Shown piece after piece: positions 6,449 to 60,958 of a stretch of DNA of 64,000 nt; within the stretch, counting starts at the first letter, position 1; each line of letters begins with the position of its first letter. This DNA comes from Octopus bimaculoides. Its lineage: Eukaryota. The notes below the pieces were generated by a model that was given only the letters and a program-made list of their open reading frames with translations, was not told where the DNA came from and made no database searches. The DNA lies in the NCBI RefSeq assembly GCF_001194135.2, contig NC_068981.1:172137800-172201799 (forward strand). The letters run 5' to 3'. The translations under genes and the position numbers were made by a program.

Positions 6449-7392
6449 GTCATACATTATTCCCTCCCTCTCACATCCATGACACCAACCACGCGCTTCG
6501 GTTTGTTCAGCTCTTTCTCCTTCCTTCCTGTCCCCTCTAAACTTCTCTTCCTCCTCGACATCCAGAGCCTTTACACAGTGATCCCTCACCACGAGGGCTG
6601 CGTGCACTCCAACATTTCCTTGATCTTTGATCCAACCCCCAACCCGACACATCCACACTCGTTTGTCTAGGCGAACTTGTCCTCTCACTCAACTGCTTCT
6701 CGTTCGTTGGTGATTTTTACCAGGAAATCTCGGAAGTGGCCATGGGAACGAGAATGAGCCCCAACTATGCGAACCAGTTCGTTGGCTACGTTGAGGCCCA
6801 AATATTCTCAACTTTCACTGGTCCCACTCCCGAACTATACGGCCGTTATATTGACGACTGTATCGGTGCAACCTCACTCTCCCGTGAACATCTAGACTCC
6901 TCCCCTCTTTTGTCAAATCTTTCCATCCTGCCCTCCACTTCTCCTGCACTACCTTTGACACCTCTGTCTCCTTTCTTGGCATTTCGGTCAGCATTCATCA
7001 CTCCACTCTTACCACCTCTATCCACTACAAACACACAGACTCACACTCATACCTCAACTTCTCCTCCTCCCACCCTAAACATGCCAAGCTTTCCATCCAC
7101 TCTTCCCAATTCCTCTGTCTACGCAGGCTCTGTAGTGACAACCATGACTTTGAGACTCAGTTTCAACTCATGGCTCGCCACTTCATCCTACGTGGATATC
7201 CCCTCACCACTATCCACACCGCCCTTGCCAGAGCACTTCCGTGGACCGTGCATCTGCTCTCTCCCCCACTACATATTCTTTGCTTTCTCTCTTTGTTTCC
7301 TTCTGTGTTCCTTTCTGTAGAAGAGCGTAGGCTCGAAACGTTAAAGACTTTTTCACTTCCCGAGCGTTAAACTAATACATCTGTTTGTTGTC
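6449..7392 (+). mobile_element. Penelope-like element: RT fragment plus 3' pLTR-like tail, 5'-truncated and frameshifted
   Basis: Motifs LDIQSLYTVIPHHEG, AMGTRMSPNYANQFVGYVE, YGRYIDDCIG and RHFILRGYPLTTIHTALARA are typical of Penelope RT. The tail gaagagcgtaggctcgaaacg follows. The element ends in an N gap. Confidence 0.9.
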
Positions 7393-9573: not shown

Positions 9574-9951
9574 GGCACTCCATCGGTTACGACGACGAGG
9601 GTTCACAGTTGATCCGATCAACGGAACAGCCTGCTCGTGAAATTAACGTGCAAGTGGCTGCGCACTCCACAGACACGTGTACTCTTAACATAGTTGTCAG
9701 GGGGATTCAGCGTGACACAGAGTGTGACGAGGCTGGTCCTTTGAAATACAAGTACAACATAACAGAAAGAAAGAGTGAGAGAAATTCGTGGTGAAAGTGT
9801 ACAGCAGGATTCGCCACCCCCACCCTTTCGGAGCCTCGTGGAGCTTTAGGTGTTTTCGCTCAATAAACACTCACAATGCTCGGTCTGGAAATTGAAACCG
9901 CCATCTAACAAACGCGAGTCTGGTGCCCTAACCACTGGGCCATTGCGCCTT
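9574..9951 (-). mobile_element. tRNA-derived SINE, full length (type A)
   Basis: Reverse complement of the 10321-10684 copy, with A- and B-box-like head. Confidence 0.9.
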
Positions 9952-9961
9952 CACAATAGGA

Positions 9962-10255
9962 GCACTCCGTCCCAGCTGATACGATCAGCGGAACAGCTTG
10001 CTCGTGAAATTAACGTGCAAGAGGCTGAGCACTCCACAGACACGTGTACCCTTAACGTAGTTCTCAGGGAGATTCAGCGTGACACAGAGTGTGGCAAGGC
10101 TGGCCCTTTGAAATACAGGTACCACTCATTTTTGTCAGCTGAGTGGACTGGAGCAATGTGAAATAAAGTGTCATGCTAAAGGACACAACACGTCGCGGGG
10201 AATTGAACTCACGATCGTGAGCCGAATGTCCTAACCACTAAGCCACGTGCCTTCA
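9962..10255 (-). mobile_element. tRNA-derived SINE with CORE-like middle and the type A 3' tail
   Basis: Shares the tail cggaacagc.tgctcgtgaaattaacgtgc...tttgaaatacaggtac with its neighbours, then switches to a CORE-like segment (aaagtgtcatgctaaaggacacaac) and a different head. Confidence 0.8.
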
Positions 10256-10320
10256 CTAAAGACATTATTGGTCAATGACTAATATTATTTTCATTTTATC
10301 TGTAAATACAAGAAACGGTG

Positions 10321-10684
10321 GAGGCGCAATGGCCCAGTGGTTAGGGCAGCGGACTCGCGGTCATAGGATCGCGTTTTCGATTCCCAGACCGGGCGTTGTG
10401 AGTGTTTATTGAGCGAAAACACGTAGCTCCGGCAGGGGATGGTGGCGAACCCTGCTGTATTCTTCCACCACAACTTTCTCTCACTCTTACTTCCTGTTTC
10501 TGTTGTACCTGTATTTCAAAGGGCCAGCCTTGTCACACTGTGTCACGCTGAATATCCCCGAGAACTACGTTAAAGGTACACGTGTCTGTGGAGTGCTCAG
10601 CCACTTGCACGTTAATTTCACGAGCAGGCTGTTCCGTTGATCGGATCAATTGAAACCCTCGACGTCGTAAGCGACGGAGTGCCA
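10321..10684 (+). mobile_element. tRNA-derived SINE, full length (type A)
   Basis: Head gaggcgcaatggcccagtggttagggcagcggactcgcgg...tttcgattcccagacc has A- and B-box-like motifs; body matches 9574-9951 in inverted orientation. Confidence 0.9.
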
Positions 10685-12504: not shown

Positions 12505-13351
12505 CATTAAACGGAAAAGAACCTGACAAAATATTTCGTGCATTTAGTTTCAAATGTTTTCATTTTAGGTTCAGATACCGCCGTAGTTCACTTTACTTTC
12601 CAAATCAACAAAATAAACGGCAGTCAAGTTCTGGATAATACAAATTATATAATCTCTTTGTGACTTAGTGCTAAAATTAGGAATTTTTTTTTTTTCACTC
12701 TTTTTATTATTTTTGTTATTAAGCCCAGGTTAAATCTTATCGAGTGTTTCACATCAGGACGGAAATGACATTTTTCTGTGGAAGTACTAGCTTCGTACAA
12801 AATTTTTAAATCATTCTGTATTCAGGTAGAATTTTTAATATACTGAACAATGATAGGTATAGATATAATCAAATAATAGAATAAATTATTTATACTATTT
12901 AGTTTCAACCTTCTTGATTTTATTAAGATAGCAATTTCTCGTCCCTATTCAATTTTACTCTCCCCCGCTACAACCCTATTCCCACTGAAACAATAAATAA
13001 AATAATAAATAAAACAATATATAAAATCAATAAATATGCCGACTAATATCTGACAAAACTTGTTCAGGCTTTAAAATTAGGCACACGTGGTGGGTGGATC
13101 TTTTGAAAAATTAGGTTTGAAATTTGGAGTAAACTATCGATGAGCCAAACGCTCAACAAAGTTTCTATTTGAGATCATTGTTGTCATCTCTCTTTAAATA
13201 TATAATCAACATATCTTTAAATTCGGAGTCCGCAAGCATATCTAAAAAGCAATCATGCGGCGAGAAACAACGAACAAGATTTACTTACACAGCTAATTCT
13301 CTTCTAAAGACACGAGTGTTACAAATTCCCATTGTTTTCCTTTAGAATAAT

Positions 13352-13746
13352 CCTTTCTATAACAGGCACAAAGCCTGAAATTTGAGGGAGGAGGATAGTC
13401 GATTACATCAACCCCAGTACTCAACAGGTACTTAATTTATCGACCCCGAAAGGATGAAAAGCAAAGTCGACCTCAGCGGAATTTGAACTCAGAACGTAGC
13501 GACGCGCGAAATACCTATTTCTTTACTGCCCACAAGGGGCTAGACACAGAGGGGACAAACAAGGACAGACAAACGGATTAAATCGATTATATCGACCCCA
13601 GTGCGTAACTGGTACTTAATTTATCGACCCCGAAAGGATGAAAGGCAAAGTCGACCTCGGCGGAATTTGAACTCAGAACGCAGTGGCAGACGAAATACCG
13701 CTAAGCATTTCGCCCGGCGTGCTAACGCTTCTGCCAGCTCGCCGCC
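13352..13746 (-). mobile_element. tRNA-derived SINE (type B) carrying an internal 184-bp module
   Basis: Head ggcggcgagctggcagaagcgttagcacgccggg and central ggtcgactttgcctttcatcctttcggggtcgataa. Flanked by the 13-bp repeat CCTTTAGAATAAT (13339-13351 and 13754-13766). The internal module spans 13516-13699. Confidence 0.9.
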
Positions 13747-15399
13747 TTTTTTGCCTTTAGAATAATGGATGCCCGAGATTAATGCTATCGCACTTTTCAC
13801 TGATGTCATTGTGGAGACTTAATCAGGTCGGTTTGTGCTGACAATTGACACGTAATTAACTGGTCAAAAATATGAGTGCACCCCAGGTATTCACACTTCA
13901 TATAATCTATTCATCGGTGTGACTGAAGACCGCATTGCACTATCTGACTCGCAGTAGGTTGTTGTACTTGTTGTTGTTAAGCAGCATGTCAGCGCTGATT
14001 AATCAGACTTATTACCAAGAGAGTTCCATCTGTGACTATTTCATTTTCTTAGTGCTTTCTGGGAAGAACTATCATCACCTTTTGAAACAGAATCGCAAAT
14101 GCAGAAATAATCAAGTGAAACGAATCAAAACTATTGCAAAAAAAATCGGGATGCTGCATTAGTCTCCCTTAGTAAGTCAGTTTTTATGCCTGTCAGCCAC
14201 TCGGTATTCAAAGGATGCAATGATGGAAAGCCTGGAAAAATGGAAAACTATAAAGAGGTAAACCTAAAGACAGTTGAAGCCGGGCATTGAACTACTTGAA
14301 CAGGAGCTAAGAAAACAACGTTAGATTGACCACGTTAGTGGATGCTTGTTGCCTTATGCGTTGAGGATCTAAGACTAAGAACTATCTTAATTAAGATGGT
14401 AAGGGAGATCTGCAGTGATTTGGTTGTCATTTCTACCATCACAAGTGAACATGTGATTGTTCCCTCGTTTATCAAATGACATGCAGTGTGGAAACTTGAG
14501 CATCTTGCATTTCCTTCGCGTTTTAGTCTGCTCTTGTATGTCTATAGCTTCTGGTGTTGTCTACAACCAAGACAAGCGAGGTGAACACTGACGTACTTAG
14601 TGCTTATGTTGTTAGCATTGTTATTTTTATTTTTCTACTTCTGAAATCCAAGTCATTTCACGACTAAAGAAAAAAAATATAGAAAACAATTTTCTATGGT
14701 AATGTTACTGCGTTTACCTTATCTTCCGTTCTTTTATTTTCGTATTCAATATTTTGTATTTTGTAAAGAATGTTTTTATTTTATTTTCGTGAAAAATATT
14801 CAACAATTATAATCACTCTCTTATAGTTCTGAAGTCTAATCCTGTTGAGGATTTACTTTTATCTTTCCGGAGTCAAAAACTAAATGTAGAAAGCTAGAGT
14901 GTGCTTCATAAGTTGGAGTGATCTTTTTCTTCTTCTTCTTCTTCTTGTAGACACTACTACAACAAAGATAGCATTGTTGTAAACAGATGTTAAGCTTCAT
15001 AATGAAGTATGGAATTATATTTTATTGCCTTTAATGTTTATGAAATTCTTATTTCATGGCACATTTCATACTTCCAATGTTTTCCTCGTCATATTAGAGC
15101 AGAAAATATAACTTTGTTATTTACCTTACGTACGCGAACTACTTTTAGTGAAAGAGTCGAAGAGAAGAAGAGACAGCATCGGCATAATTTTTATTTATCA
15201 AAAATGTGACACTTTCCTCATTCATTTCTTCCCAGAAAAGTGCTTTTCTAAAATTCCTTTTTTTTTTTTTTTTTACTGACTCACAAACTTCTGTCATCAA
15301 CATTTCAAACAAAACATCGACCACATGGATTTCATCAACCAGGAGATATCTTTTAAAGGCCATAGTCTCTGTTTAATATTCTAATTAAATAAATCCACA

Positions 15400-22362: not shown

Positions 22363-22761
22363 NNNNNNNNNNNNNNNNNNNNNNNNNNNNNNNNNNNNNN
22401 NNNNNNNNNNNNNNNNNNNNNNNNNNNNNNNNNNNNNNNNNNNNNNNNNNNNNNNNNNNNNNNNNNNNNNNNNNNNNNNNNNNNNNNNNNNNNNNNNNNN
22501 NNNNNNNNNNNNNNNNNNNNNNNNNNNNNNNNNNNNNNNNNNNNNNNNNNNNNNNNNNNNNNNNNNNNNNNNNNNNNNNNNNNNNNNNNNNNNNNNNNNN
22601 NNNNNNNNNNNNNNNNNNNNNNNNNNNNNNNNNNNNNNNNNNNNNNNNNNNNNNNNNNNNNNNNNNNNNNNNNNNNNNNNNNNNNNNNNNNNNNNNNNNN
22701 NNNNNNNNNNNNNNNNNNNNNNNNNNNNNNNNNNNNNNNNNNNNNNNNNNNNNNNNNNNNN

Positions 22762-23124
22762 GGTACAAGACCAGCAAGTTCGGGGTAGGAGTTAAGTCGA
22801 TTACATCGATCCCAGTATCCACTGGTACTTATTTTATTGACTCTGATTGGATGAAAAGCATTTGAATTCAGAACGTAAAGACGGACAAAATACCTATTTC
22901 TTTACTGCCCACAAGGGGCTACACACAGAGGGGACAAACAAGGACAGACAAACGGATTAAGTCGATTAAATCGGCCCCAGTGCGTAACTGGTACTTAATT
23001 TATCGACCCCGAAAGGATGAAAGGCAAAGTCGACCTCGGCGGAATTTGAACTCAGAACGCAGTGGCAGACAAAATACCGCTAAGCATTTTTCCGGCGTGC
23101 TAACGATTCTGCCAGCTCGCCGCC
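22762..23124 (-). mobile_element. tRNA-derived SINE (type B) carrying the same internal 184-bp module
   Basis: Same architecture as 13352-13746. Module at 22895-23078, with GACAAAATACC duplicated (22884-22894 and 23068-23078). Confidence 0.9.
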
Positions 23125-23761: not shown

Positions 23762-23979
23762 ACGCGGTAGTTGTATAAGATTACGAAACCTAAGTTATTA
23801 GGGCTTAATATAGTATGAGAAGTTACAAATCCCTGTAGTCGGGAATTAGCAAAGTTATATGCAGCCATAAAGTAGATGACAATTAGTTTAGACATATATA
23901 GTTATAAGTCACTTAAATTGCACAAGTTATAATAATAATTGAATAATTGTTTCGAATTTCCGCACAAGGCCAGCTGACT

Positions 23980-24125
23980 TAATCGAGCCCAGTTCTCGAC
24001 GGGTACTTTATATAATCGATCTCGAAAAGGCGAATGGCAAAGTCGACCTCGGTTGAATTTGAACGGGAAGATAAGTCGAGAAGCATTGTGTCTGATGCGC
24101 TAACGATTCCACCAGTTTGCCGTCG
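23980..24125 (-). mobile_element. Older type B SINE copy without the module
   Basis: Degenerate ggcaaagtcgacctcgg...gctaacgattccaccagtttgccg. Confidence 0.7.
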
Positions 24126-24699
24126 TATTGAAACTATGATAATTAAAACTATATAGATTGAATAACGCATCCGTAACCATAACAACATAAGTAAGTCGTT
24201 ATTGTTTAAGGCTAGACAAATAGTAAAAACATTTGTAAAGCTTTCCATCTGCTGTCACTAAAGCTATCTTTTAATAACGAACAACTAATATATATTGAGA
24301 TGTCGCGTTAAATATAGATATTTACATAATACAAGTCAACTTTTCGGATATTTTTCTTGCTATTTTCTGTTCTTGTTGTCACCGTCGGTTTTGTCATTAT
24401 GATTGTTGTTGCTGCTATTATAATTGCTGATGATGTTGTTGTTGATACTGTATATTTTGTTGCTTTTTTTATTCCCTTTAAAATTGCAAGCTTAAATCAG
24501 TGCACTTGGAACAAAACAATTTTTCCTTTCTTTTTCTTGTACAGACATCTCGACATATCGTCTTTTGCAATAACATGCTGCGTTTCAACTAAAAATGCGA
24601 TAACAAATGCCACCACAAATGAAAAGAAAAAATAAGTGCACTGGCTTAGTAGAAACCGAATAACAAGCTGGCCTAGATTGCATGCGTGCATACGTAAGT

Positions 24700-24703
24700 A
24701 CAC

Positions 24704-24771
<68 letters not shown>

Positions 24772-24987
24772 GCATACATACATACACACACACACACATA
24801 CATACGTACGTACGTACGTAGGCAGACAGGCAGACAGACAGACAGACACACAGACAGACAGACAGACACACAGACAGACAGACACACAGACAGACACACA
24901 CACAGACAAACAGACAGACAGACACACAGACAGACACACACACAGACAAACAGACAGACAGACACACAGACACACAGACAGACAGAC

Positions 24988-25020
<33 letters not shown>

Positions 25021-25410
25021 CATACATACATACATACATACATACATACATACACACACACACATACATACATACGTACGTACGTACATAGGCAGGCAGG
25101 CAGACAGACAGACAGACACACAGACAGACAGACACACAGACAGACAGACAGACAGATAGATAGATAGATAGATAGATAGATATACATACACACATACATA
25201 CATGCATACATACATACATGCATACACACATACATACATACATACATACATGCATGCATGCATACACACACATACATACATACATACATACATGCATGCA
25301 TGCATACACACACATACATACATGCATGCATACATACATATATGCATGCATACATACATACATACATACATACATACATACATGTTGCATGCGTGCATAC
25401 ATACATGTAT
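24700..25410. repeat. Compound (GATA)/(CATA)/(GACA)/(CA) microsatellite with a higher-order duplicated block
   Basis: The block acacacacatacatacgtacgtacgtac.taggcag.caggcagacagacagacagacacacag occurs at ~24785 and again at ~25055. Confidence 0.9.
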
Positions 25411-25512
25411 TGTTGCTGGTGCATAAAAGAAGAATATACCATATTTTAAACTCTCTTTGTTTCTCTGACCTTTTACAAACAGTAATTGACATTTTCTTCT
25501 TTCTCTTTTCAG

Positions 25513-25543
25513 AATTGGAAAATTTTGTTGTAATTCCACTAAA
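25513..25543 (+). CDS. Candidate 31-nt micro-exon (phase 1 to 2), xLENFVVIPLx
   Basis: Branch-like ttgac, long polypyrimidine tract attttcttctttctcttttcag, donor AAA|gtatga. Confidence 0.45.
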
Positions 25544-25744
25544 GTATGATACTAAAATGAAGTATTTACTAAGATCCCATAATTTTGCTTAATGTTTCCA
25601 TAAAATGAAAATTTATGGGAAATAATTTCAGCAGTGAAACCGCACAAACGCTATGTTTGTTTCTGAGTTACGTTAATCTTTTTTTTCTTTTAACGCTGCA
25701 TCCGAAAATTGTGTTGCTTCAGAGAATACTAGGATATTGTCAGG

Positions 25745-27303: not shown

Positions 27304-28180
27304 TGTTGGCAAGAAAGTAATTTCGATATTTTAGTGTGAAATAAAAGTCATTTTGTTTTTTCATTCAAAGAATGAACTTTAATCAGTTATATATTTTCCA
27401 TTTTGTTCGATACTTGTTACCATCTCTCTGGCAACTTCATGATTCCGCGCTCATAGAACTTCTGGTCCTTATCAGCCAAAAACTGAAGCAAGTGCGATTT
27501 CAGGTCATCATCATTATTGAAATTTTTACCATTCAAAGAATTTTATAAACTTCGAAATAAATGATAATCTGATGGTGCAAGGTTAGGGCTATATGCTGGA
27601 TGTGACATCACTTTCCACCCAAGCTCCAACAATTTTTCACAAGTTAGCAAAGACGTGTGTGGTCTGGTGTTGTCATAGTGGAACACGATTCCTTTACGAT
27701 CTGCCAATTCTGGCCCGTTTTTTTTTTTTTTTTTTTTCTTTTTTTTCATTGCTACCCCTGGTTTCATTAGTTGTTGACTTTAAACATCTGAATTGATCGC
27801 TTGGTTCCTCGGAAGCAGCTCAAAATACACAAGACTTTAGTAATCCTACCAAACTGACAGCATGACCTTTTTTTGATGCAATTCAGCTTTCGATGTGGCT
27901 TGTTCTCTGCATATGAAATTATATGACAATCAAATTCAATTATGGTTTTGATTCGGTCATCATCAACTTCAGTAGTTCGACCAGAACGTTGGTTGACTTT
28001 GGTAAAAATAGCAGCTAAATCTTCTTTAAATTGCACTCTATTGTCTTTAAAATCGTTGGGCACATTGGACAATCTTAGATACACAGGGCCTGAGACAGAA
28101 GCATGATGAGCACAGCTGCAAAGCTTCTGATGATGTCTGTTTACTCAGTGATGACCTGAGAAATAAGAACGTCGAAAATA
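27304..28180 (-). mobile_element. Mariner (DD34D-type) transposase remnant, internally deleted
   Basis: SGRTTEVDDDRIKTII...; RKGIVFHYDNTRPHTSLLTCEKLLELGWKVMSHPAYSPNLAPSDYHLFRSL. TIR-like gttggcaagaaagtaatttcg at ~27305; no second TIR seen. Confidence 0.9.
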
Positions 28181-29499: not shown

Positions 29500-29793
29500 A
29501 ACAGACCTATTCTTTTCGTTAACTCGTTTCAGTTCATTGGAAGGCGGCCGTGCCGAAGAACCATCTTGATAGGTTTAGTCGGTCAAATTGACCCCGATAC
29601 ATATTTCAAGTGTGCTACTTCTATCAGCATCCCTTTTGCCGAACCGCTAAGGTAAGAGGGCGTAAGCATTCCGACACCAATGAGGCGAGAGCCGAACAAA
29701 AACAAAAAGACGCACATGTACACACAAGCATACACAGAGAAACGGACAGACAGACAGAAAGACAGGCGAACGGACGGACAGACAAACAGACAA

Positions 29794-29861
<68 letters not shown>

Positions 29862-32150: not shown

Positions 32151-32434
32151 CTTTCCCTTTTAAAGCCTGCCACTGATGTGGGTGTGTGTGTGTTATAATT
32201 ACTCAATGTTCCCTTTCTTTTTAATCAGGAGTGCCTTATTTAAGGAACATTTTGGTTGGCACTGTTTTGGTTTTTGCTTTTGTTTCTTTTTCTGGCTGAA
32301 GAGCGATTACATTATTGTCGTTTGAGTCATTGTCATCGTCCTTGCTGTTGTAGTTGTTCTTAATCACCTACGCTTGAGCAAATGCATGATATGTCGGATT
32401 AACTGAGGCATTTTGTCGACATTTCAAGCTGTAA

Positions 32435-32442
32435 TTCTCTCC

Positions 32443-32482
<40 letters not shown>

Positions 32483-32505
32483 CTCTCTCTCTCTCTCGCT
32501 CTCTC

Positions 32506-32536
<31 letters not shown>

Positions 32537-32635
32537 CTATCTCTTTCTCTCTCTCTCTCTCTCTCTCGCTCTCTCTCTATCTATCTATCTATCTCTATCT
32601 CTTTCTCTCTCTCTCTCTCTCTCTCTCGCTCTCTC

Positions 32636-32666
<31 letters not shown>
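32435..32666. repeat. (CT)n/(CTAT)n microsatellite with a repeated higher-order unit
   Basis: The unit ...ctctcgctctctctatctatctatct... recurs three times. Confidence 0.9.
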
Positions 32667-32667
<1 letters not shown>

Positions 32668-32749
32668 AAAAAAAAATCCAAAAAAGAAACAAAAAGGCAA
32701 AAGAGAGTCACTTACTGTTATAGTATCTTCAATAACAATGACAATATTG

Positions 32750-33050
32750 ACCAAGGTTACCGTGGTTTTTTCCGTAGGCTTTTTTTTTCCACGGTTAAAC
32801 CCAAACTGTCCTCCCCTTTTTACACGAGAACATTACTGTGATACACGATCCCTATTGATCGCTATTTCTTTTTTTTTTCTCGATCCCTTTTGATCGAACT
32901 CCCCCCTTTTTCCTTCCTACGATCCCTTTTGATCGACACCCCCCTACTTCCCTTTTTCCCTTCCTCCTCCCCAAAAGAAAAGCTCTACATTGTATTTGTC
33001 CCATCTTTGTTGAGCCCTGTGTGGCTAATAAAAGAACTGTATCTATCTAT
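32750..33050 (+). mobile_element. Probable 5'-truncated retroelement 3' end whose tail resembles the 184-bp module tail
   Basis: Three gatccc(t/.)ttgatcg motifs, then ttgtatttgtcccatctttgttgagccctgtgtggctaataaaagaa, running into (TATC)n. Confidence 0.5.
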
Positions 33051-35172: not shown

Positions 35173-35444
35173 TGTATGTGTTTAACACTGTACATCTGTA
35201 AAAGATACCCTCTCAAGACGAATATGACAGTTAATTAGGCTTTCAATGATATGCCTGCCTTAAGTATGACACAAATTGCTATTTCAAATTAATGCTGCTT
35301 CTGCCGCACGTAACGAATTAATACTTGTAAAGTTATGCCATTGGAAAGAATGTTATCAAAATATGATATAGGAATGTATTTTTATATGTAGCAAAATCAT
35401 ACATGAGGTTACTTAGAACAAAATAGTGCTTTCAAATTTTTGGC

Positions 35445-35652
35445 ACAAGGCTAGCAATTTCGGGAGAAGGGTTAAGTTGATTACATCGCCCCCAGTGCTT
35501 AACTGGTATTTATTTTATCGACCTCGAAAGGATGAAAGGCAAAGTTGACTTCGGCAGTATTTGAATTCATGGTGGGGGGAGAAGTAAATACGGGCGAAAT
35601 GCCGCTGAGAATTTTGCCCGATGTGCTAACGATTCATCCAGCTTGCTGCCTC
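35445..35652 (-). mobile_element. Type B SINE without the module (empty site)
   Basis: Continuous gggcgaaatgcc|gctgagaatt at the position where the module sits in the two filled copies. Confidence 0.8.
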
Positions 35653-42299: not shown

Positions 42300-43151
42300 C
42301 CATAGCTTCGTGCACATGTTTAGAGATTAAAGTTGTTGTCCAACCCTCATTGAACTGACTAATGATCAAGAAGGAAGCTATTTCTTGGACCAGCCAATAA
42401 CAAACGGAGAAAAGATTGGGCCAGTGAGACTGTGAAGAGGCCACTAGCATTTTGGGACTATCATATTCTCCATTGAGTCCAGATTTGCTGTATTTTCTGA
42501 CAATGGTCGAGTCTGGGTCTGGAGACTGTGATCAAGAATTTGACGTGAAAAGATTTCAGCCAACAATGAAACATGACAGCTATTCTATGATGGTTTGGGG
42601 GAGCAATTTGGAGCAATGGTCAATCAGTGCTGGTGGAGTGTGAGGGAAACATAAACTCAGATAAATATATGTCCATATTGCAGGAAATACTCCTTCCAAT
42701 TTTTTCCAGTGGTGAAATGATTAAAGAAGACTCTTTATTTATGGAAGATAGGTCTCCTTGTCACACGGCTAAAATGATCCAAGATTTGTTGGATGGCATT
42801 GGCATTAAAAAGCTTCTATAGCCAAGCCAGTCACCAGATATGAACCCTATTGAACACCTCTGGAACATAATGGACAGGACACTTCATAAAAGAACAAGAA
42901 AGCATCTTCAAAGCCAGATCTTTTGAGATTACTGCATGAAACTTGACAAGAAATTCCGCAAGAGAATATTCGTCATCTGATCATTAACATGCCTAATCGG
43001 GTCCTTGCATTGAAAAATGCAAAGGGCATGTCTACTAAATATTGAATATTCACATTATAACAATTAATAAATAATTCGAATGTATAATTTCAGATTTAAA
43101 TAAATTTTAACGATTATAAGGATGTCTATTTAGTTCTATTTTGTCTGTGTA
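42300..43151 (+). mobile_element. Tc1-family (DD34E) transposase remnant
   Basis: FQPTMKH..SMMVWG; EGNINSDKYMSIL; FMEDRSPCHTAK; PSQSPDMNPIEHLW; MPNRVLALKNAKGMSTKY*. Putative end at ...tgtctgtgta. Confidence 0.9.
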
Positions 43152-52402: not shown

Positions 52403-54603
52403 GTTTCCCATAATACTATTTATGTGCAAAATGTAAGTTCAAAAGTTATTGTTTCAAGATAATTTATGCAACCTAATATGGAGGAGCCAATATTGCTTAG
52501 TCGTCATTTATTTCATTTCTATTTTTATTTCATTTACTTATTTATTGTTCGTGGAACTTGTGTTTACTATTAATCTCGCTATACTAGATTATTTTGCCCA
52601 ATTAAAACACACGCATTATTAAGCACAATCCTTTATTCTTTTTAAATTTTAATAGCATCAAAATCTTTTGTTGTACAATCAGAACCTGATCGATTTATCA
52701 TTCTGCATTTGATTCTTTTATAGAAAGGATTTAAAAAAACAACAGAAACCTCATTTAAAAATGAAAACTCTGTTAGTGGGAGCAGATGTTCGGCAACGTA
52801 ATGCACCAGGCTGCTGTATCAAAGTGCCAGATCAAAGAAACGCTTGATTTGGTTCATTAATTTGGTAATCTTCATGGTCTGTTCTTTCAACCGGCGTACA
52901 TGACCAGTAATTTAGCTATCATTAATCATTGCTTTGAAAGCCTTTATTCTTCTATGCTGCCTTCATATTTCGTATTTTGCATTACAGCTGCCTTTCGGCA
53001 TTTTTTTTTCTCTCCGTTTAACTTCAGACATACAAAACAAAGAAATTATGAAAGTACAGCAAACTACAGTCAGCCGTCATTTGTGAGCGAGTATGGTTTG
53101 GCAAGATGTACTATGCTTTTACTAATTGCTTTAAGCGTCTATGTCGTCGTGAGCTGACATAGGTACCCTCTCAACCCTATCAGTCTTGACCCAGCGGAAC
53201 ATTCAGGATGTAACATCAGCAGGGAAATAAGGCAGCACCAGCGCCCGACTTGTGATTATTGCAGTTGAATAGATTGGAGCAATGTAAAATGAGGTGATTT
53301 GCTCAAGAACACAACGTGCTATCAGGTCCAAGAATTGAACTCATTATCTTATGTTCAGGAGACATAACAGCAAGGCCCCGAAACAAAGTCAAAATGTTAA
53401 TTGGATAGTATTTATTATCTAGCGTTCCACTCAGTTCTGTATTAAAATCTTGTTTGCATTGGTTTTGTTTTTTATTCTCCATGGCGTATAAAATAAATTT
53501 CTGTTATAAACTGAAGTCGATTCAATTAACTTTAACCCGATCTCTTGCAAAGATTGACTTATGCCTAGTCTAAAGCAAAAAGCAAAAAGCTCAAAACTTA
53601 TAAGAGCTGAAAACTAATTAAAAGTTTTCTGCAGCATTTCCTTGGATGCGTTTTTAATCCGTACAGAAACAAGTAGCGTATGAAAGCAGGTATAATTGTA
53701 ACAGATTTTGTTCTGACTCTCTACGCTCTGAGTTCAAATTCTGTCGCGGTCATCTTCGCCTTTCATCCTTTCGGGGTCGATAAAACAGTATCAATCGAAG
53801 GCCGTGGACTGGCGGAACTGTAAGAACGTCGGGCTGAATGCCTTGTAGAATTTGTTCCTGCTCTTTGTGAGATCAAATACTACCATAGCATTCATTGGAT
53901 GGTAGACTTCACCTGTCGCTTGGTTTAACACTATCTTGGGTGCCTTTAGCAGAGTCCACTCTGTTACAAGCATTCGAGTCAGATTTCTTTCCTCTCTCCC
54001 TTCCTCCCACTAGTCCCGGATACCGGGTACTACCTCGCTTACGAGTAAAAGATAAAAAAATTAACGTCAGTTTGCTAAATAAATTTGCTTTGTTTTTTGT
54101 TTTTTTATTTACGTTATTGTTGTTGTTTAATCCCACGTGAGTTCTGATTTAGCAGACCTATATGATCAAGTGCATTCCAGCCATAACCGACCCATCATCT
54201 CGCAAAGCAGCGGAGCGTGATTTAAGGGAAAATTAATTTCTCTTTGGGTAAGTCGATTGATCACGTAAAGGATCCCAATGAGGGAACTCTTTCACGGTCA
54301 ATCTTCCCTTGTTTGTAGACCGTAGATCTGATAAAATTTTATAAATTTTCATGTTTTTAAAGAGATATATAAATAACGAATTCCATTGTGTTGAGGATTT
54401 TTGAAGCAAGACGCCAAGTTCTGATCTAGTTTGCCTGGCTGGACACAATCACGAGCATCTAACACACTGCTTTGTTTAACAAGGTCCTAGATGAGCTTAA
54501 GCAGAGTTCACTCTGTTTCCAAGTATTCAATTTTCCCTACAGATATTGGCCTGTAGATGTTCAGGTTGAGTATCAAAAGTGACAGTCTTACTAGTCTGGT
54601 GAA

Positions 54604-56699: not shown

Positions 56700-56890
56700 T
56701 AGGGCGGTCAGCTGGTAGAAGTATCAACGCGTCGGATAAAGTGCTGAGCAGCATTTCTTCCGGTTCTTTACGTTCTGGATTTAAATTCCGCCGAGGTCGA
56801 CTAGGGCTATCATTCTTTCGGATGAACACTGGGATACATGACTTCCCCTTCCCCTTAAGATCGGTGGTCCTGCGTCAAAATTTGAAACCA
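56700..56890 (+). mobile_element. Older type B SINE copy without the module
   Basis: gggcggtcagctggtagaag...ttacgttctggatttaaattccgccgaggtcgact. Confidence 0.75.
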
Positions 56891-56912
56891 TTATAGATAG
56901 AAAGAGAGACAG

Positions 56913-58260: not shown

Positions 58261-59537
58261 TAATTGATTTGTTTTTCTTTCTACTTATTCAGATTTGTTA
58301 TTGTAGAGTTTCAAGAGACACTGTTTCGTTTTCCTATCATTTCATGACTCCTATTTCATTAAAGAATAAATAAAATCCAGTGATGGTTAGATCCTTTTCT
58401 ACCAATTACTACAGTTTATCATCTTATTCTGTTTTATTTTATATTGTATACAGTTCACAGGGATATGCTCAACACCCCTATCTTGCAGACCTCACTTTTT
58501 ACGGAGTGTAGTAACGAGATGCCTTCTAAAGGTTGTAAAAGATATACAACGAATTCGTAACCAAGAATTTAAACCACAATTTTCATGTTCGCTTCGATTG
58601 TTGTTGGAACTTGCACTTAGAATTTATTTGTTTAACCTGTCAGTACTCTATACGATTTACCACTGCATAACTGAATGTGTGGTATGGATCTCAACCAAGT
58701 AGGACATGTAATATATCAAGAACAACATATCTGTGGGTCGTACGTTGTCTTTCGGTGAACTACCTACATGCCTTAAGTTGCTCAATCAAAGTCTGTTTAT
58801 TACTGACGTAAATTTTCTGTTTTGTTATGCATAAAATATTTTATTCAAATTAACGATGAAAATTTCCAACAGTGGTGTGAAAGTAGAATATAATTCTGTA
58901 TAACTGTACGGATTTGAAAATTAAATACCTGAAGAAATTGTAGCCGAAGAGCTGTCGTTTGTTTTTGCGAAAAATTGCCTTCATGCATTACTTTTCCATT
59001 TGGGTTTGCTCATTTGTCACTTGATTTATTGCCATCTCTTTGTCATTGGATGTTAAACCAGTTCTATTATGAAGCATTGAATGTTACGTAATTAAGTTGA
59101 TAATTTATTAATCGACTGCTACATCACGTTCTGAAATATCACTAAATGTTAATCCAAACTCTTGAGAATATTATCTCTATCACTGGCTCGGGAGTGATAA
59201 AGTATTGTTGATTTGGGCATGAAATACTGTCTCGGAATCTCCTTAGAGAGCTGTACCAGTCAGCAGATTGAATAGGAAAAAAAAAACATAATAGCTGTGT
59301 AACATAGGACAGATCACATTGTTGTATCATGGTATTTATTTTTTGTTGGATAGTTCTTGCCAGCAATCCAAGCTTTGTGACATGAATACGAATCTGCAAT
59401 CATTTAACTGATTCCAGTGCAATTCTCAACAAACCAGTCCCATTACTTATTGATAACGATGCCTAACATTTCTGAAAATAATTTGTAGAGATTCTCTTCA
59501 GTATTTCCCAAAATCTTCAATCTTATCAAATACGCAT

Positions 59538-60958
59538 ATGGTAAGCAACGTTGCAACAAATAAACATGATGAACCATGCCCCCATGATCCCGGAGCACGG
59601 GGGGAGAATTCACCAAGGGAAGGTGTGTCAGAGGAAAGTGATTCAACAGGCGTGAAGAAGCCAAAGATTAAGTGGCCGAAGGCAAATGATGCAGTGAGCT
59701 ATAAAAAATTCGACGACAACGTAGTAAGAATGACCACCAAATTCAAAGGAGACAACGAACAAAAGCTCCAGAAGGTTAATATAATCTATCAGGAAGGAGA
59801 GATAAGATTTGAACTTGAAACAACAGGGAATGGAGAATCATCGGCAAAGGGCGGACCATCGAGGAGAGAAAGACGGATCGCAAAGATACGAGAAGAGAAG
59901 ACAAAACTCAGAACCAGATTGAGGAATTCAAAGGAGGAGGTACGAACAGGGAGGGAAAAAAAAGCGGACGAGGCAGTTAACAGGACGATCGGAAAGCCAA
60001 GGCACGCTGACATAATTGGAGCGACGCAAGAAGCAAGAGCCGGTCTAGGGTTGCACAATTTCAAGCCATTTTGCATGAGCAGTGTAAACGAGATGAAAGA
60101 GGCAGTGGTACATGAAGTGGGAAAGAAGGAAGAAGAAAGGCGAAATGTACATTTGGTGTAATGTAGTCAACAGGAACAGTGCCTGAGATGGGAGGAATAT
60201 GTAGTCAGTCGTAGAATCTCATGGAAGAAACTTTGGGCTTGGGAACAAGCAAGAACATCCTTCCTGATCAAGTCTACCTTCGACGTTTTACCTTCACCGG
60301 CGAATTTAGTCCGGTGGAACATACAAACAACCGATGAATGTAGATGCGGAGAGAAAGCAGGCTTGCACTAGACAGATGCGGAGAGAAAGCAAGCTTGCAC
60401 TAGACAGATATATATGGCGTCACAATCAAGTCCTCGGCGTCATAAGCGCAGCACTCAAGGAGTAGATCGAGGGATATAATAAGGGAGAATACCTAAAAGT
60501 GGAAAAGAGCGGAAAAATATACATCCAGAAGGAGGGAAAAGGACAAATAAAATATACAAGACAGACTAAAGGTGGCAGGGATACTGGGATCTGGCAGCGG
60601 ATTTGGAAAGACTGTTAATATTTCCACTCATAGAAACAACAAGACTGAACTTAATCCTATGAAACACAAAACGGAGAATTGGAATTTTCCCAGAGCTGAC
60701 AGTGCCATGGAAAGAGAACATCGCTAATACAGAGCAACGGAAGGAGAAGAGGTATGAGAAATTAATCGAAGAGTACGGAGAACAGGGATGGACTGTCGAG
60801 GAAGAAGAAACGCACTCAACACCAGAGCTGAAGACCCCTCCGAAAGGGGGGCCCCGCCACGTCGAAAACGGTAGAGGAGTAGGGGGCGAAACCGGATGTG
60901 GTTCCTCTTGATGATGTCTTTAGCCACTGGATCCTATAAAGAAGCTGTTGAGGTAGCA
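59538..60958 (+). mobile_element. HERO-like (restriction-like endonuclease) non-LTR retrotransposon, RT domain deleted
   Basis: N-terminal KIKWPKANDAVSYKKFDDNV...SRRERRIAKIR is fused directly to post-RT motifs VRTGR...RHADIIGATQEARAGLG, SFLIKSTFDVLPSPANLVRW, YIWRHNQVL and ELTVPWKENIANTEQRKEKRYEKL. Confidence 0.85.

What the first reader, a model, noticed from the sequence alone, without database searches (positions are those of the whole stretch)
13507..13699. A 184-bp headless module sits at the same internal site of two separate SINE copies: possible SINE-targeting parasite
Seen: type B SINEs at 13352-13746 and 22762-23124 are both interrupted at exactly the same point (sense ...gcttagc|GGTATTT...). 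Both inserts are 184 bp (13516-13699; 22895-23078) and differ by about 4 substitutions by eye. The surrounding host halves are much more diverged, and one has a deletion. The junction is duplicated with a locus-specific variant on both sides: CGAAATACC twice here, GACAAAATACC twice at the second locus, as expected for a target-site duplication made from each host. The insert is the SINE body starting just after the A box, with a new 3' tail (...ttgtgggcagtaaagaaata). Other type B copies (23980, 35445, 47755, 56700) lack it. Inference: a promoter-incomplete retroposon inserts sequence-specifically into old SINE copies, using the host A box with its own B box to rebuild a Pol III unit. This implies a target-specific LINE endonuclease or homology-guided target-primed reverse transcription. 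I do not know of this being described, but could not search.
Basis: partly seen in the sequence, partly recalled or inferred. Interest (0 to 1): 0.88.

Follow-up and report, generated by a model that had tools for sequence, protein, structure and literature searches.

The report
Young SINE joined to older SINE
Two octopus SINE copies carry the same nearly identical 184-bp extra SINE body at exactly the same internal point; this is real and not a simple amplified dimer, but two copies cannot show whether it is targeted insertion into old SINEs, and the "headless parasite" idea is not needed.

Summary
On the minus strand, composites at 13352-13746 and 22762-23124 have the order head (47 nt), 184-nt module, then a SINE body and tail starting again at GGTATTT. 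The modules differ at 5 of 184 positions (2.7%). The 3' parts differ at 27 of 132 (20.5%) plus three indels (p = 2.5e-7). The divergence change-point falls on the 3' junction.

Three points weaken the interpretation:
- The head is not clearly "old host". It differs by 3 substitutions and 1 indel in 47 nt and groups slightly better with the module (likelihood ratio about 3.5).
- The 9-nt "TSD" is SINE-internal sequence. It is duplicated automatically when any SINE is joined in register to position 48 of another. Its locus-specific variant is one C/T at a CpG.
- Head plus module is a complete 231-bp SINE, so no headless RNA is required.

Locus 1 has a 20-bp outer TSD (18/20). The junction lies at the loop edge of a predicted 13-bp hairpin.

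Best reading (about 0.45): a younger subfamily inserted at a fixed site into resident older copies, with its 5' end resolved by homology. Rivals are an RNA-level chimera, a unit-amplified dimer, and conversion or artefact.

No further octopus sequence was reachable, so n = 2.

The parts
13700..13746 (-). Locus 1 head: the first 47 nt of the SINE (GGCGGCGAGCTGGCAGAAGCG...GCTTAGC), with an A-box-like TGGCAGA at element position 11
13516..13699 (-). Locus 1 184-nt module: SINE positions 48-231. It contains GGTATTTCG, a B-box-like GAGTTCAAATTCC, the body, and its own tail ending GTGGGCAGTAAAGAAATA
13507..13515 (-). Second copy of GGTATTTCG, directly after the module's tail. It is either a target-site duplication or simply position 48-56 of the second SINE body
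13352..13506 (-). Locus 1 3' part: the rest of an older, related SINE body and tail (...GTGCCTGTTATAGAAAGG). It is 88% identical to the module body over 117 nt
13747..13766 (-). Outer target-site duplication, 5' copy in element sense. The + strand reads TTTTTTGCCTTTAGAATAAT
   Evidence: 18 of 20 identical to 13332-13351
13332..13351 (-). Outer target-site duplication, 3' copy in element sense. The + strand reads TTGTTTTCCTTTAGAATAAT
23079..23124 (-). Locus 2 head (46 nt)
22895..23078 (-). Locus 2 184-nt module, 97.3% identical to the locus 1 module
22762..22894 (-). Locus 2 3' part. It starts GGTATTTTG and is a decayed SINE body (18-bp deletion removing part of the B-box region, CpG-poor). It is cut by the assembly gap 22363-22761

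Best explanation
The window is octopus DNA, rich in one tRNA-type SINE family. At both loci a young SINE subfamily (here 'A': head + body + tail ...GTGGGCAGTAAAGAAATA) has been placed by LINE-driven, target-primed reverse transcription into a resident, older copy of a related subfamily ('B').

**Proposed steps**
1. The bottom strand is opened between SINE positions 47 and 48. This is the 3' edge of the loop of the element's strongest predicted hairpin.
2. The A RNA is copied from its tail.
3. The second nick falls 9 nt downstream.
4. The incoming cDNA is itself a SINE, so its 5' side is joined through the homologous 9 nt (GGTATTTYG), or through the whole homologous head.
5. The product is resident or replaced head, then A body and tail, then the resident body from position 48.

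The insert therefore looks 'headless' without any headless RNA or rebuilt promoter.

**Shown**
- The identical junction at two unrelated loci.
- A young unit next to old 3' parts that are unalike each other.
- A divergence change-point at the junction.
- Empty copies of the same family.
- An outer TSD at locus 1.

**Inferred**
- That the B copies were there first.
- The nick position and the 9-nt stagger.
- The homology-mediated 5' joining.
- The reason for site choice (endonuclease specificity, or a structure-prone inverted repeat).
For: - **Same junction, unequal divergence.** The modules are 97.3% identical. The 3' parts are 79.5% identical with 3 indels, p = 2.5e-7.
- **Change-point on the junction.** The maximum-likelihood change-point in L1-L2 divergence is after composite position 238 (support 230-240). 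The junction is 231|232. The rates are 3.8% and 24%.
- **The two 3' parts look like independent copies.** They are as unlike each other (80%) as unrelated copies of the family in the window, which are 62-82% identical. The locus 2 part is CpG-poor (3.8 per 100 nt against 5.4-6.0 in the modules) and has lost 18 bp.
- **Occurrence.** Both occurrences of the A tail in the window lie in this context. At least 4 other copies are uninterrupted at the site.
- **Too common for rare accidents.** 2 of about 11 copies that include the site are filled.
- **The one variable site agrees with a TSD.** Within the duplicated 9 nt it is C/C at locus 1 and T/T at locus 2.
- **Structural position.** The junction is at the loop/stem boundary of a predicted 13-bp hairpin, 31-43 paired with 48-60.
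- **Not a duplication.** The flanks are unrelated.
- **Target-specific LINEs exist in octopus.** Clades that elsewhere include target-specific members (Dong-R4, L1-Tx1) are among the recently active octopus LINEs (PMC13282606).
Against: - Only two copies are available, and one abuts an assembly gap.
- The head at locus 2 carries about 1 private change, where 4-6 would be expected from its own 3' part (p about 0.02-0.06, my estimate). If it is old host this is unexpected. It needs either replacement of the head by homology or an inflated divergence at the contig end.
- The 9-nt 'TSD' is automatic for any in-register SINE-SINE joint. Its co-variation is one CpG transition, which could also be a paired change in the hairpin (G36-C55 at locus 1, A36-U55 at locus 2).
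- The two 3' parts share three states that no other copy in the window shows together: GG[T]ATTT, GC[T]TTTC and [T]ACTGG. A single origin of the whole composite would also explain this.
- There is no complementarity between the A RNA 3' end and the nicked target.
- No partner LINE was identified and no orthologous empty site was seen.
Confidence: 0.45

Rival explanations
1. Dimeric (composite) SINE family amplified as a unit. The joint between a complete A monomer and a B monomer lacking its first 47 nt arose once, by any accident. Both loci are retroposed copies of such dimers. The unequal divergence comes from different master lineages with a constrained left monomer, from exchange of the 3' monomer by homologous template switching, or from later gene conversion of the left monomer.
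For: - The joint is identical on both sides at both loci, which a single origin explains most simply.
- A 20-bp TSD encloses the whole composite at locus 1 and abuts the head directly.
- The two 3' parts share derived states absent from the other copies.
- The heads are 93% alike, whereas other heads are 80% alike or less.
- Dimers, and module exchange by template switching or non-allelic recombination, are standard in SINE evolution (PMC4758252).
Against: - Left and right parts differ six-fold in divergence between the two copies (3.8% against 24%), with the shift exactly at the joint. A unit diverging neutrally cannot give this without an added event in each locus.
- 5 of the first 21 nt after the joint already differ.
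- On the sense strand, a T4 run 56 nt into the right monomer (position 287 at locus 1; position 268 at locus 2) would stop many Pol III transcripts before the B tail.
Confidence: 0.2
2. RNA-level chimera made anew each time. The LINE reverse transcriptase starts on a B-type SINE RNA whose 5' end lies at position 48, for example after cleavage in the hairpin loop. It then jumps to, or the fragment was already ligated to, the 3' end of a full-length A RNA. The fused cDNA inserts at a new site with one TSD. This resembles U6/L1 and other bipartite retrocopies.
For: - The left 231 nt is a complete SINE, and the head groups slightly better with the module (LR about 3.5).
- One TSD encloses the whole at locus 1.
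- The breakpoint is at the 3' edge of a hairpin loop, a plausible RNA cleavage site.
- Precedents exist: U6/L1 chimeras by template switching (PMC4476161), RtcB ligation before retrotransposition (PMC6789731), and multi-part chimeras in a fungus (PMC2104539).
Against: - Known chimeras have variable breakpoints in the 3' partner and are rare. Here both ends of the joint are identical in 2 of 2 cases, and composites make up about 2 of 11 family copies in the window.
- The A part ends at exactly the same base, with no terminator U-run.
- The decayed 3' part at locus 2 would have to be copied from the RNA of an old, damaged copy.
- The C/C against T/T agreement would be coincidence (rough chance 3-10%).
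Confidence: 0.13
3. Secondary event or artefact. Either one true composite spread its left part into another resident SINE by gene conversion (DNA- or cDNA-mediated), or the locus 2 joint or its 3' part is a misassembly at a contig end in a high-copy repeat.
For: - The locus 2 3' part lies within 133 nt of a 399-N gap.
- Conversion would explain a young head plus module next to an old 3' part, and the shared T in GGTATTT.
Against: - A conversion tract ending exactly at the joint, with only 47 nt of left homology, is unlikely.
- Locus 1 also shows a right part with more private changes than its left part.
- The 20-30 nt spanning the joint at locus 2 must exist in reads for a k-mer assembler to have built it.
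Confidence: 0.1

Closest known systems
Target-specific non-LTR retroposons that insert into other repeats (Tx1L in the Tx1D transposon of Xenopus; R1/R2 in rDNA; Dong/R4; Tx1-clade elements in snRNA, tRNA and 5S genes). From my own knowledge of the literature.
   Same: The insertion point is the same in independent copies of a multicopy target. The insert is younger than the target. Empty target copies coexist with filled ones.
   Different: Here the insert is a SINE and the target is a related SINE, so insert and target are homologous and the 5' joint is hidden by homology. No partner LINE or endonuclease was identified. Specificity rests on two cases.
Dimeric and composite SINEs (Alu, tRNA-dimer and tRNA-trimer SINEs; module exchange, PMC4758252)
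   Same: Two SINE-derived monomers lie head to tail. The left one carries the promoter and the right one lacks a head. One TSD encloses the whole at locus 1.
   Different: The two monomers are of very different apparent age within each locus, and the right monomers of the two copies are as unalike as unrelated copies. This is not expected for a dimer amplified as a unit.
Bipartite chimeric retrocopies (U6/L1 and similar; PMC4476161, PMC6789731, PMC2104539)
   Same: A complete small Pol III RNA copy is fused to a 5'-truncated retroelement, possibly with one TSD.
   Different: The breakpoint is fixed in both partners. The composites appear abundant. The 3' partner is a SINE of the same family.
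Microhomology-mediated 5' joining of truncated LINE-1 insertions, and preferred Alu-in-Alu insertion sites. From my own knowledge.
   Same: The 5' end of a new insertion is set by short homology between cDNA and target. Nested insertions recur at preferred points of resident SINEs.
   Different: The homology here is 9 nt or more because insert and target are the same kind of element. The site is not an A-rich L1-type target.

Membership tests
tRNA-type SINE (Pol III, LINE-dependent retroposon) | Internal A and B box promoter in a tRNA-related head | tested here: inconclusive
   An A-box-like TGGCAGA lies at position 11. GAGTTCAAATTCC at 72-84 resembles a B box but has one extra base, so a strict pattern failed. 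ARAGORN found no tRNA and Rfam gave no tRNA match.
tRNA-type SINE (Pol III, LINE-dependent retroposon) | Short, multicopy, dispersed, flanked by target-site duplications | tested here: met
   About 11-13 copies or fragments lie in 64 kb, on both strands. Locus 1 has a 20-bp TSD, 18/20 identical.
tRNA-type SINE (Pol III, LINE-dependent retroposon) | 3' tail shared with a partner LINE | not testable with these tools
   No LINE 3' end with the A or B tail is present in the window, and no octopus genome was reachable. B-type copies end ...GAAAC(C/A)ATTAT..., read.
Dimeric SINE amplified as a unit | Same monomer-monomer joint in all copies | tested here: met
   2 of 2
Dimeric SINE amplified as a unit | Both monomers equally diverged between copies | tested here: not met
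   8/230 against 27/132, p = 3.4e-7. The change-point lies at the joint.
Target-specific retroposon insertion | Identical insertion point in independent target copies, with empty targets also present | tested here: met
   Two loci with unrelated flanks and different 3' parts. At least 4 copies are empty. n = 2 only.
Target-specific retroposon insertion | Target-site duplication made of target sequence on both sides of the insert | tested here: inconclusive
   GGTATTTCG occurs twice at locus 1 and GGTATTTTG(TC) twice at locus 2. These bases belong to the SINE consensus, so they are duplicated by any in-register joint. One informative CpG site.
Target-specific retroposon insertion | Target older than insert on both sides | tested here: inconclusive
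   The 3' side is clearly older. The 5' side (head) has 4 differences in 47 nt and is intermediate. lnL favours grouping it with the insert by 1.24.
Target-specific retroposon insertion | Filled and empty orthologous sites; a partner LINE with a site-specific endonuclease | not testable with these tools
   All collection scans and look-ups returned nothing for this genome.
Template-switch or ligation chimeric retrocopy (U6/L1 type) | Variable breakpoint in the 3' partner; rare | tested here: not met
   The breakpoint is the same in 2 of 2. Composites are about 2 of 11 family copies in the window.
Template-switch or ligation chimeric retrocopy (U6/L1 type) | One TSD around the whole chimera | tested here: met
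   Locus 1 only. Locus 2 is cut by a gap. A nested insertion into a resident copy predicts the same thing.
Known octopus SINEs (OR1, OR2, OK of Ohshima and Okada 1994) and conserved SINE cores (Nin-DC/Deu, CORE, Ceph) | Sequence match to the published consensus | not tested
A full-text search for sequence words found nothing. I recall a resemblance of ...TTTCATCCTTTCGGGGTCGATAAA..TAAGTACCAG to the Nin-DC/Deu core, but this is from memory only.

The most novel reading that the evidence does not exclude
A SINE subfamily, and therefore its LINE partner's machinery, integrates site-specifically into older copies of its own family. The site is the loop/stem boundary of a conserved inverted repeat. 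Homology with the resident element completes the insertion, so each event rebuilds an intact promoter-bearing unit on top of a dead copy. This would be a SINE that targets SINEs.
Probability: 0.3. Interest if true: 0.7.

Novelty: new variant of a known kind. Interest (0 to 1): 0.42.

Why it matters
If genome-wide data confirm a fixed insertion point in resident SINEs, this would be a rare case of a non-autonomous retroposon with a repeat-specific "safe harbour". It would imply a target-specific LINE activity in octopus, a genome where SINEs make up several per cent of the DNA (11.6% reported for O. vulgaris, PMC13282606). It would also show how homology between insert and target shapes the products. 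If it turns out to be a dimeric subfamily, it is routine repeat annotation. Either way, automated repeat libraries are likely to split or mis-merge these composites.

Tried and rejected
**More copies from outside the window: all attempts failed**
- Exact-pattern scans for the module tail and for conserved SINE core strings found nothing in viral contigs, metagenome contigs or prokaryote genome contigs.
- Protein searches with the antisense ORF spanning the joint and with a concatenated multi-frame translation of the A tail and joint found nothing.
- Look-ups of a window TE ORF and of its octopus homologue found no contig. One ENA hit was a 788-bp contig of no use.
- Sequence words were absent from paper full texts and from the one supplement held for the O. 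vulgaris repeat paper.
- The Albertin 2015 genome paper is not held.

**tRNA origin of the head**
- ARAGORN and Rfam gave nothing.

**Hairpin covariation across the old copies**
- Too decayed to be informative: 8 pairs, 1 compensatory.

**Hypotheses rejected**
- Segmental duplication of one locus: the flanks are unrelated.
- Random independent insertions: two hits at the same base of elements covering about 4% of the window.
- A young SINE landing next to a pre-truncated copy: no TSD of GGTATTTYG lies upstream of either head.
- A reverse-transcriptase block at a modified tRNA base: position 47/48 does not map to a known hard-stop position. This is my own reasoning.

**Pfam**
- It recognised none of the short TE-like ORFs.

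Full report
**What is there**

The window is draft eukaryotic sequence with 12 N gaps. Its best protein match is an uncharacterised Octopus bimaculoides protein, 80% identical to a TE-like ORF at 59538-60161.

It holds about a dozen copies or fragments of one SINE family on both strands. Two of them, both on the minus strand, are composites. In element sense the order is:
- a 47-nt head (GGCGGCGAGCTGGCAG...GCTTAGC);
- a 184-nt module running from GGTATTTYG through a B-box-like GAGTTCAAATTCC and the SINE body to its own tail ...CCCCTTGTGGGCAGTAAAGAAATA;
- a second SINE body that starts again at GGTATTTYG and ends in the tail typical of the other copies.

The coordinates are 13352-13746 and 22762-23124. 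The second composite is cut by the gap 22363-22761. The module's tail occurs nowhere else in the window. The flanks of the two loci are unrelated. At least four other copies are uninterrupted at the site.

**Divergence by segment**

| Segment | Differences between the two loci |
|---|---|
| Module | 5 of 184 (2.7%), no indel |
| 3' part | 27 of 132 (20.5%), plus three indel events including an 18-bp deletion |
| Head | 3 of 46, plus one 1-nt indel |

Module against 3' part gives p = 2.5e-7. Head against 3' part gives p = 0.038. Head against module gives p = 0.20.

A likelihood scan puts the single change-point after composite position 238, with support 230-240. The 3' junction is 231|232. The rates are 3.8% to the left and 24% to the right. 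No second change-point appears at the head/module boundary.

Computed by hand from the counts, grouping the head with the module beats grouping it with the 3' part by 1.24 lnL units (likelihood ratio about 3.5). This is a preference, not a demonstration.

The two 3' parts are 80% alike, no closer than unrelated copies of the family in the window, which are 62-82% alike. The locus 2 part is CpG-poor. The two heads are 93% alike, whereas all other pairs of heads are 80% alike or less.

Three elements of the interpretation do not hold up as stated.

1. Only the 3' half is clearly old, so "host halves much more diverged" is half true. At locus 2 the head carries about one private change. I would expect 4-6 from the decay of its own 3' part (rough p 0.02-0.06).
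2. The duplicated 9-11 nt are SINE positions 48-56(58). They are present in every copy, so any in-register joint of a SINE to position 48 of another SINE duplicates them.
   - The locus-specific variant is one C/T at a CpG.
   - I estimate roughly a ten-fold likelihood in favour of a host-derived duplication over coincidence. That about cancels the evidence from the head.
   - The same site pairs with head position 36 in a predicted hairpin (G-C at locus 1, A-U at locus 2). This offers a second, non-TSD explanation.
3. Head plus module is a complete 231-nt SINE. Its tail end (GCCCCTTGTGGGCAGTAAAGAAATA) loosely resembles the B tail end (GGCCTTGTGCCAAAATTTGAAACC). No headless RNA and no promoter reconstitution need be postulated.

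**Further anatomy**

- Locus 1 is bounded by a 20-bp direct repeat, 18/20 identical, that abuts the head directly (13747-13766 and 13332-13351). This is an outer TSD. Both a resident B copy and a composite inserted as a unit predict it.
- B-type copies end ...GAAAC(C/A)ATTAT....
- The junction 47|48 lies exactly at the 3' edge of the 4-nt loop of a predicted 13-bp hairpin (31-43 paired with 48-60) in the young units. The old copies are too decayed to test covariation.
- On the sense strand the locus 1 left unit has no T4 run. The first one is 56 nt into the right part, at position 287. Locus 2 has T4 runs at positions 51, 235 and 268.
- The two 3' parts share GG[T]ATTT, GC[T]TTTC and [T]ACTGG, a combination seen in no other copy. 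They therefore come from one B sub-lineage or from one ancestral composite.

**Mechanism**

I commit, at about 0.45, to nested insertion by target-primed reverse transcription of the younger subfamily into resident older copies at a fixed site. The 5' end is resolved through homology with the resident element.

This accounts for:
- the fixed joint;
- the sharp change in divergence;
- the unlike 3' parts;
- the empty copies;
- the abundance, 2 of about 11;
- the agreement of the 9 nt within each locus.

The weakly "young" head then requires partial replacement through the homologous heteroduplex, or inflated error at the contig end of locus 2.

Site choice could reflect a specific endonuclease. 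Clades with target-specific members, Dong-R4 and L1-Tx1, are among the recently active LINEs reported for O. vulgaris (PMC13282606). It could also reflect nicking at the inverted repeat. Both are inference.

The rivals are:
- **A unit-amplified dimer with added events (0.2).** It is favoured by the identical joint and the shared states. It is disfavoured by the six-fold divergence contrast.
- **A chimera made at the RNA level by template switching or ligation (0.13).** Precedents are PMC4476161, PMC6789731 and PMC2104539. It is disfavoured by the fixed breakpoints and the abundance.
- **Conversion or misassembly (0.1).**

**Comparison and novelty**

The thing works most like target-specific non-LTR insertion into a multicopy target, with a SINE as both insert and target. 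It resembles dimeric SINEs in architecture but fails their uniform-divergence expectation. It resembles U6/L1-type chimeras in having a complete small RNA copy at the 5' side but fails their variable-breakpoint pattern.

Module exchange, dimers and template switching are accepted SINE biology (PMC4758252). I found no description of this composite. However, the papers searched give no octopus SINE consensus sequences, and no repeat library was available.

**Limits**

Every attempt to reach more octopus sequence failed. All inference therefore rests on two copies, one of them beside a gap.

Noticed in passing
window 59457-60158 (+), also 60663-60908 (+): A long open frame (234 codons stop to stop; 207 aa from the first Met) has its best database match to an uncharacterised Octopus bimaculoides protein (UniRef A0A0L8IE92, 80% identity over 45% of the query). 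No Pfam domain was found. It is probably part of an octopus-specific transposable element, and it identifies the window as octopus.
   Followed up: partly
window 9603-10652: Three copies of another repeat of about 120-160 bp lie within 1.1 kb. Two are direct (9603-9758 and 9970-10125, 90% identical) and one is inverted (10534-10652, 92-93% complementary). Further inverted arms are also present. The family is unidentified.
   Followed up: partly
window 6631-7317 (+): An open frame contains ...MGTRMSPNYANQFVGYVE...YGRYIDDCIG..., which reads like a reverse-transcriptase motif region (YxDD) of a decayed retroelement. Pfam found nothing at E <= 0.01.
   Followed up: partly
window 27546-28144 (-) and 42428-42818 (+): Short open frames (...DNTRPHTSL...HPAYSPNLAPSDYHLF... 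and ...MEDRSPCHTAK...) look by eye like remnants of mariner/Tc1-type transposases. Pfam did not confirm this.
   Followed up: partly
window 53660-53913 (+): Two fragments of the same SINE family lie directly end to end. A body fragment (model positions about 15-132) is followed by a head-containing fragment (about 2-90). This is another SINE-SINE juxtaposition, with a joint different from the one studied.
   Followed up: no
window 13332-13351 / 13747-13766; 3' ends of copies at 35405-35480, 56825-56900, 23925-23995: B-type copies end ...GAAAC(C/A)ATTAT(T)..., and the locus 1 target begins ATTATT. The SINE tail may end in ATT repeats and prime on ATT/TAA-like target sequence, which would fit a LINE partner with a preference for TAA-type repeats.
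   Followed up: no
window 24500-25590, 29650-29850, 32413-32841 and next to most N gaps: Long microsatellite and minisatellite tracts, (CA)n, (GT)n and TATC/TCTA-type repeats, flank most of the 12 assembly gaps. This is typical of a short-read draft. Sequence next to gaps, including the locus 2 3' part, deserves caution.
   Followed up: no
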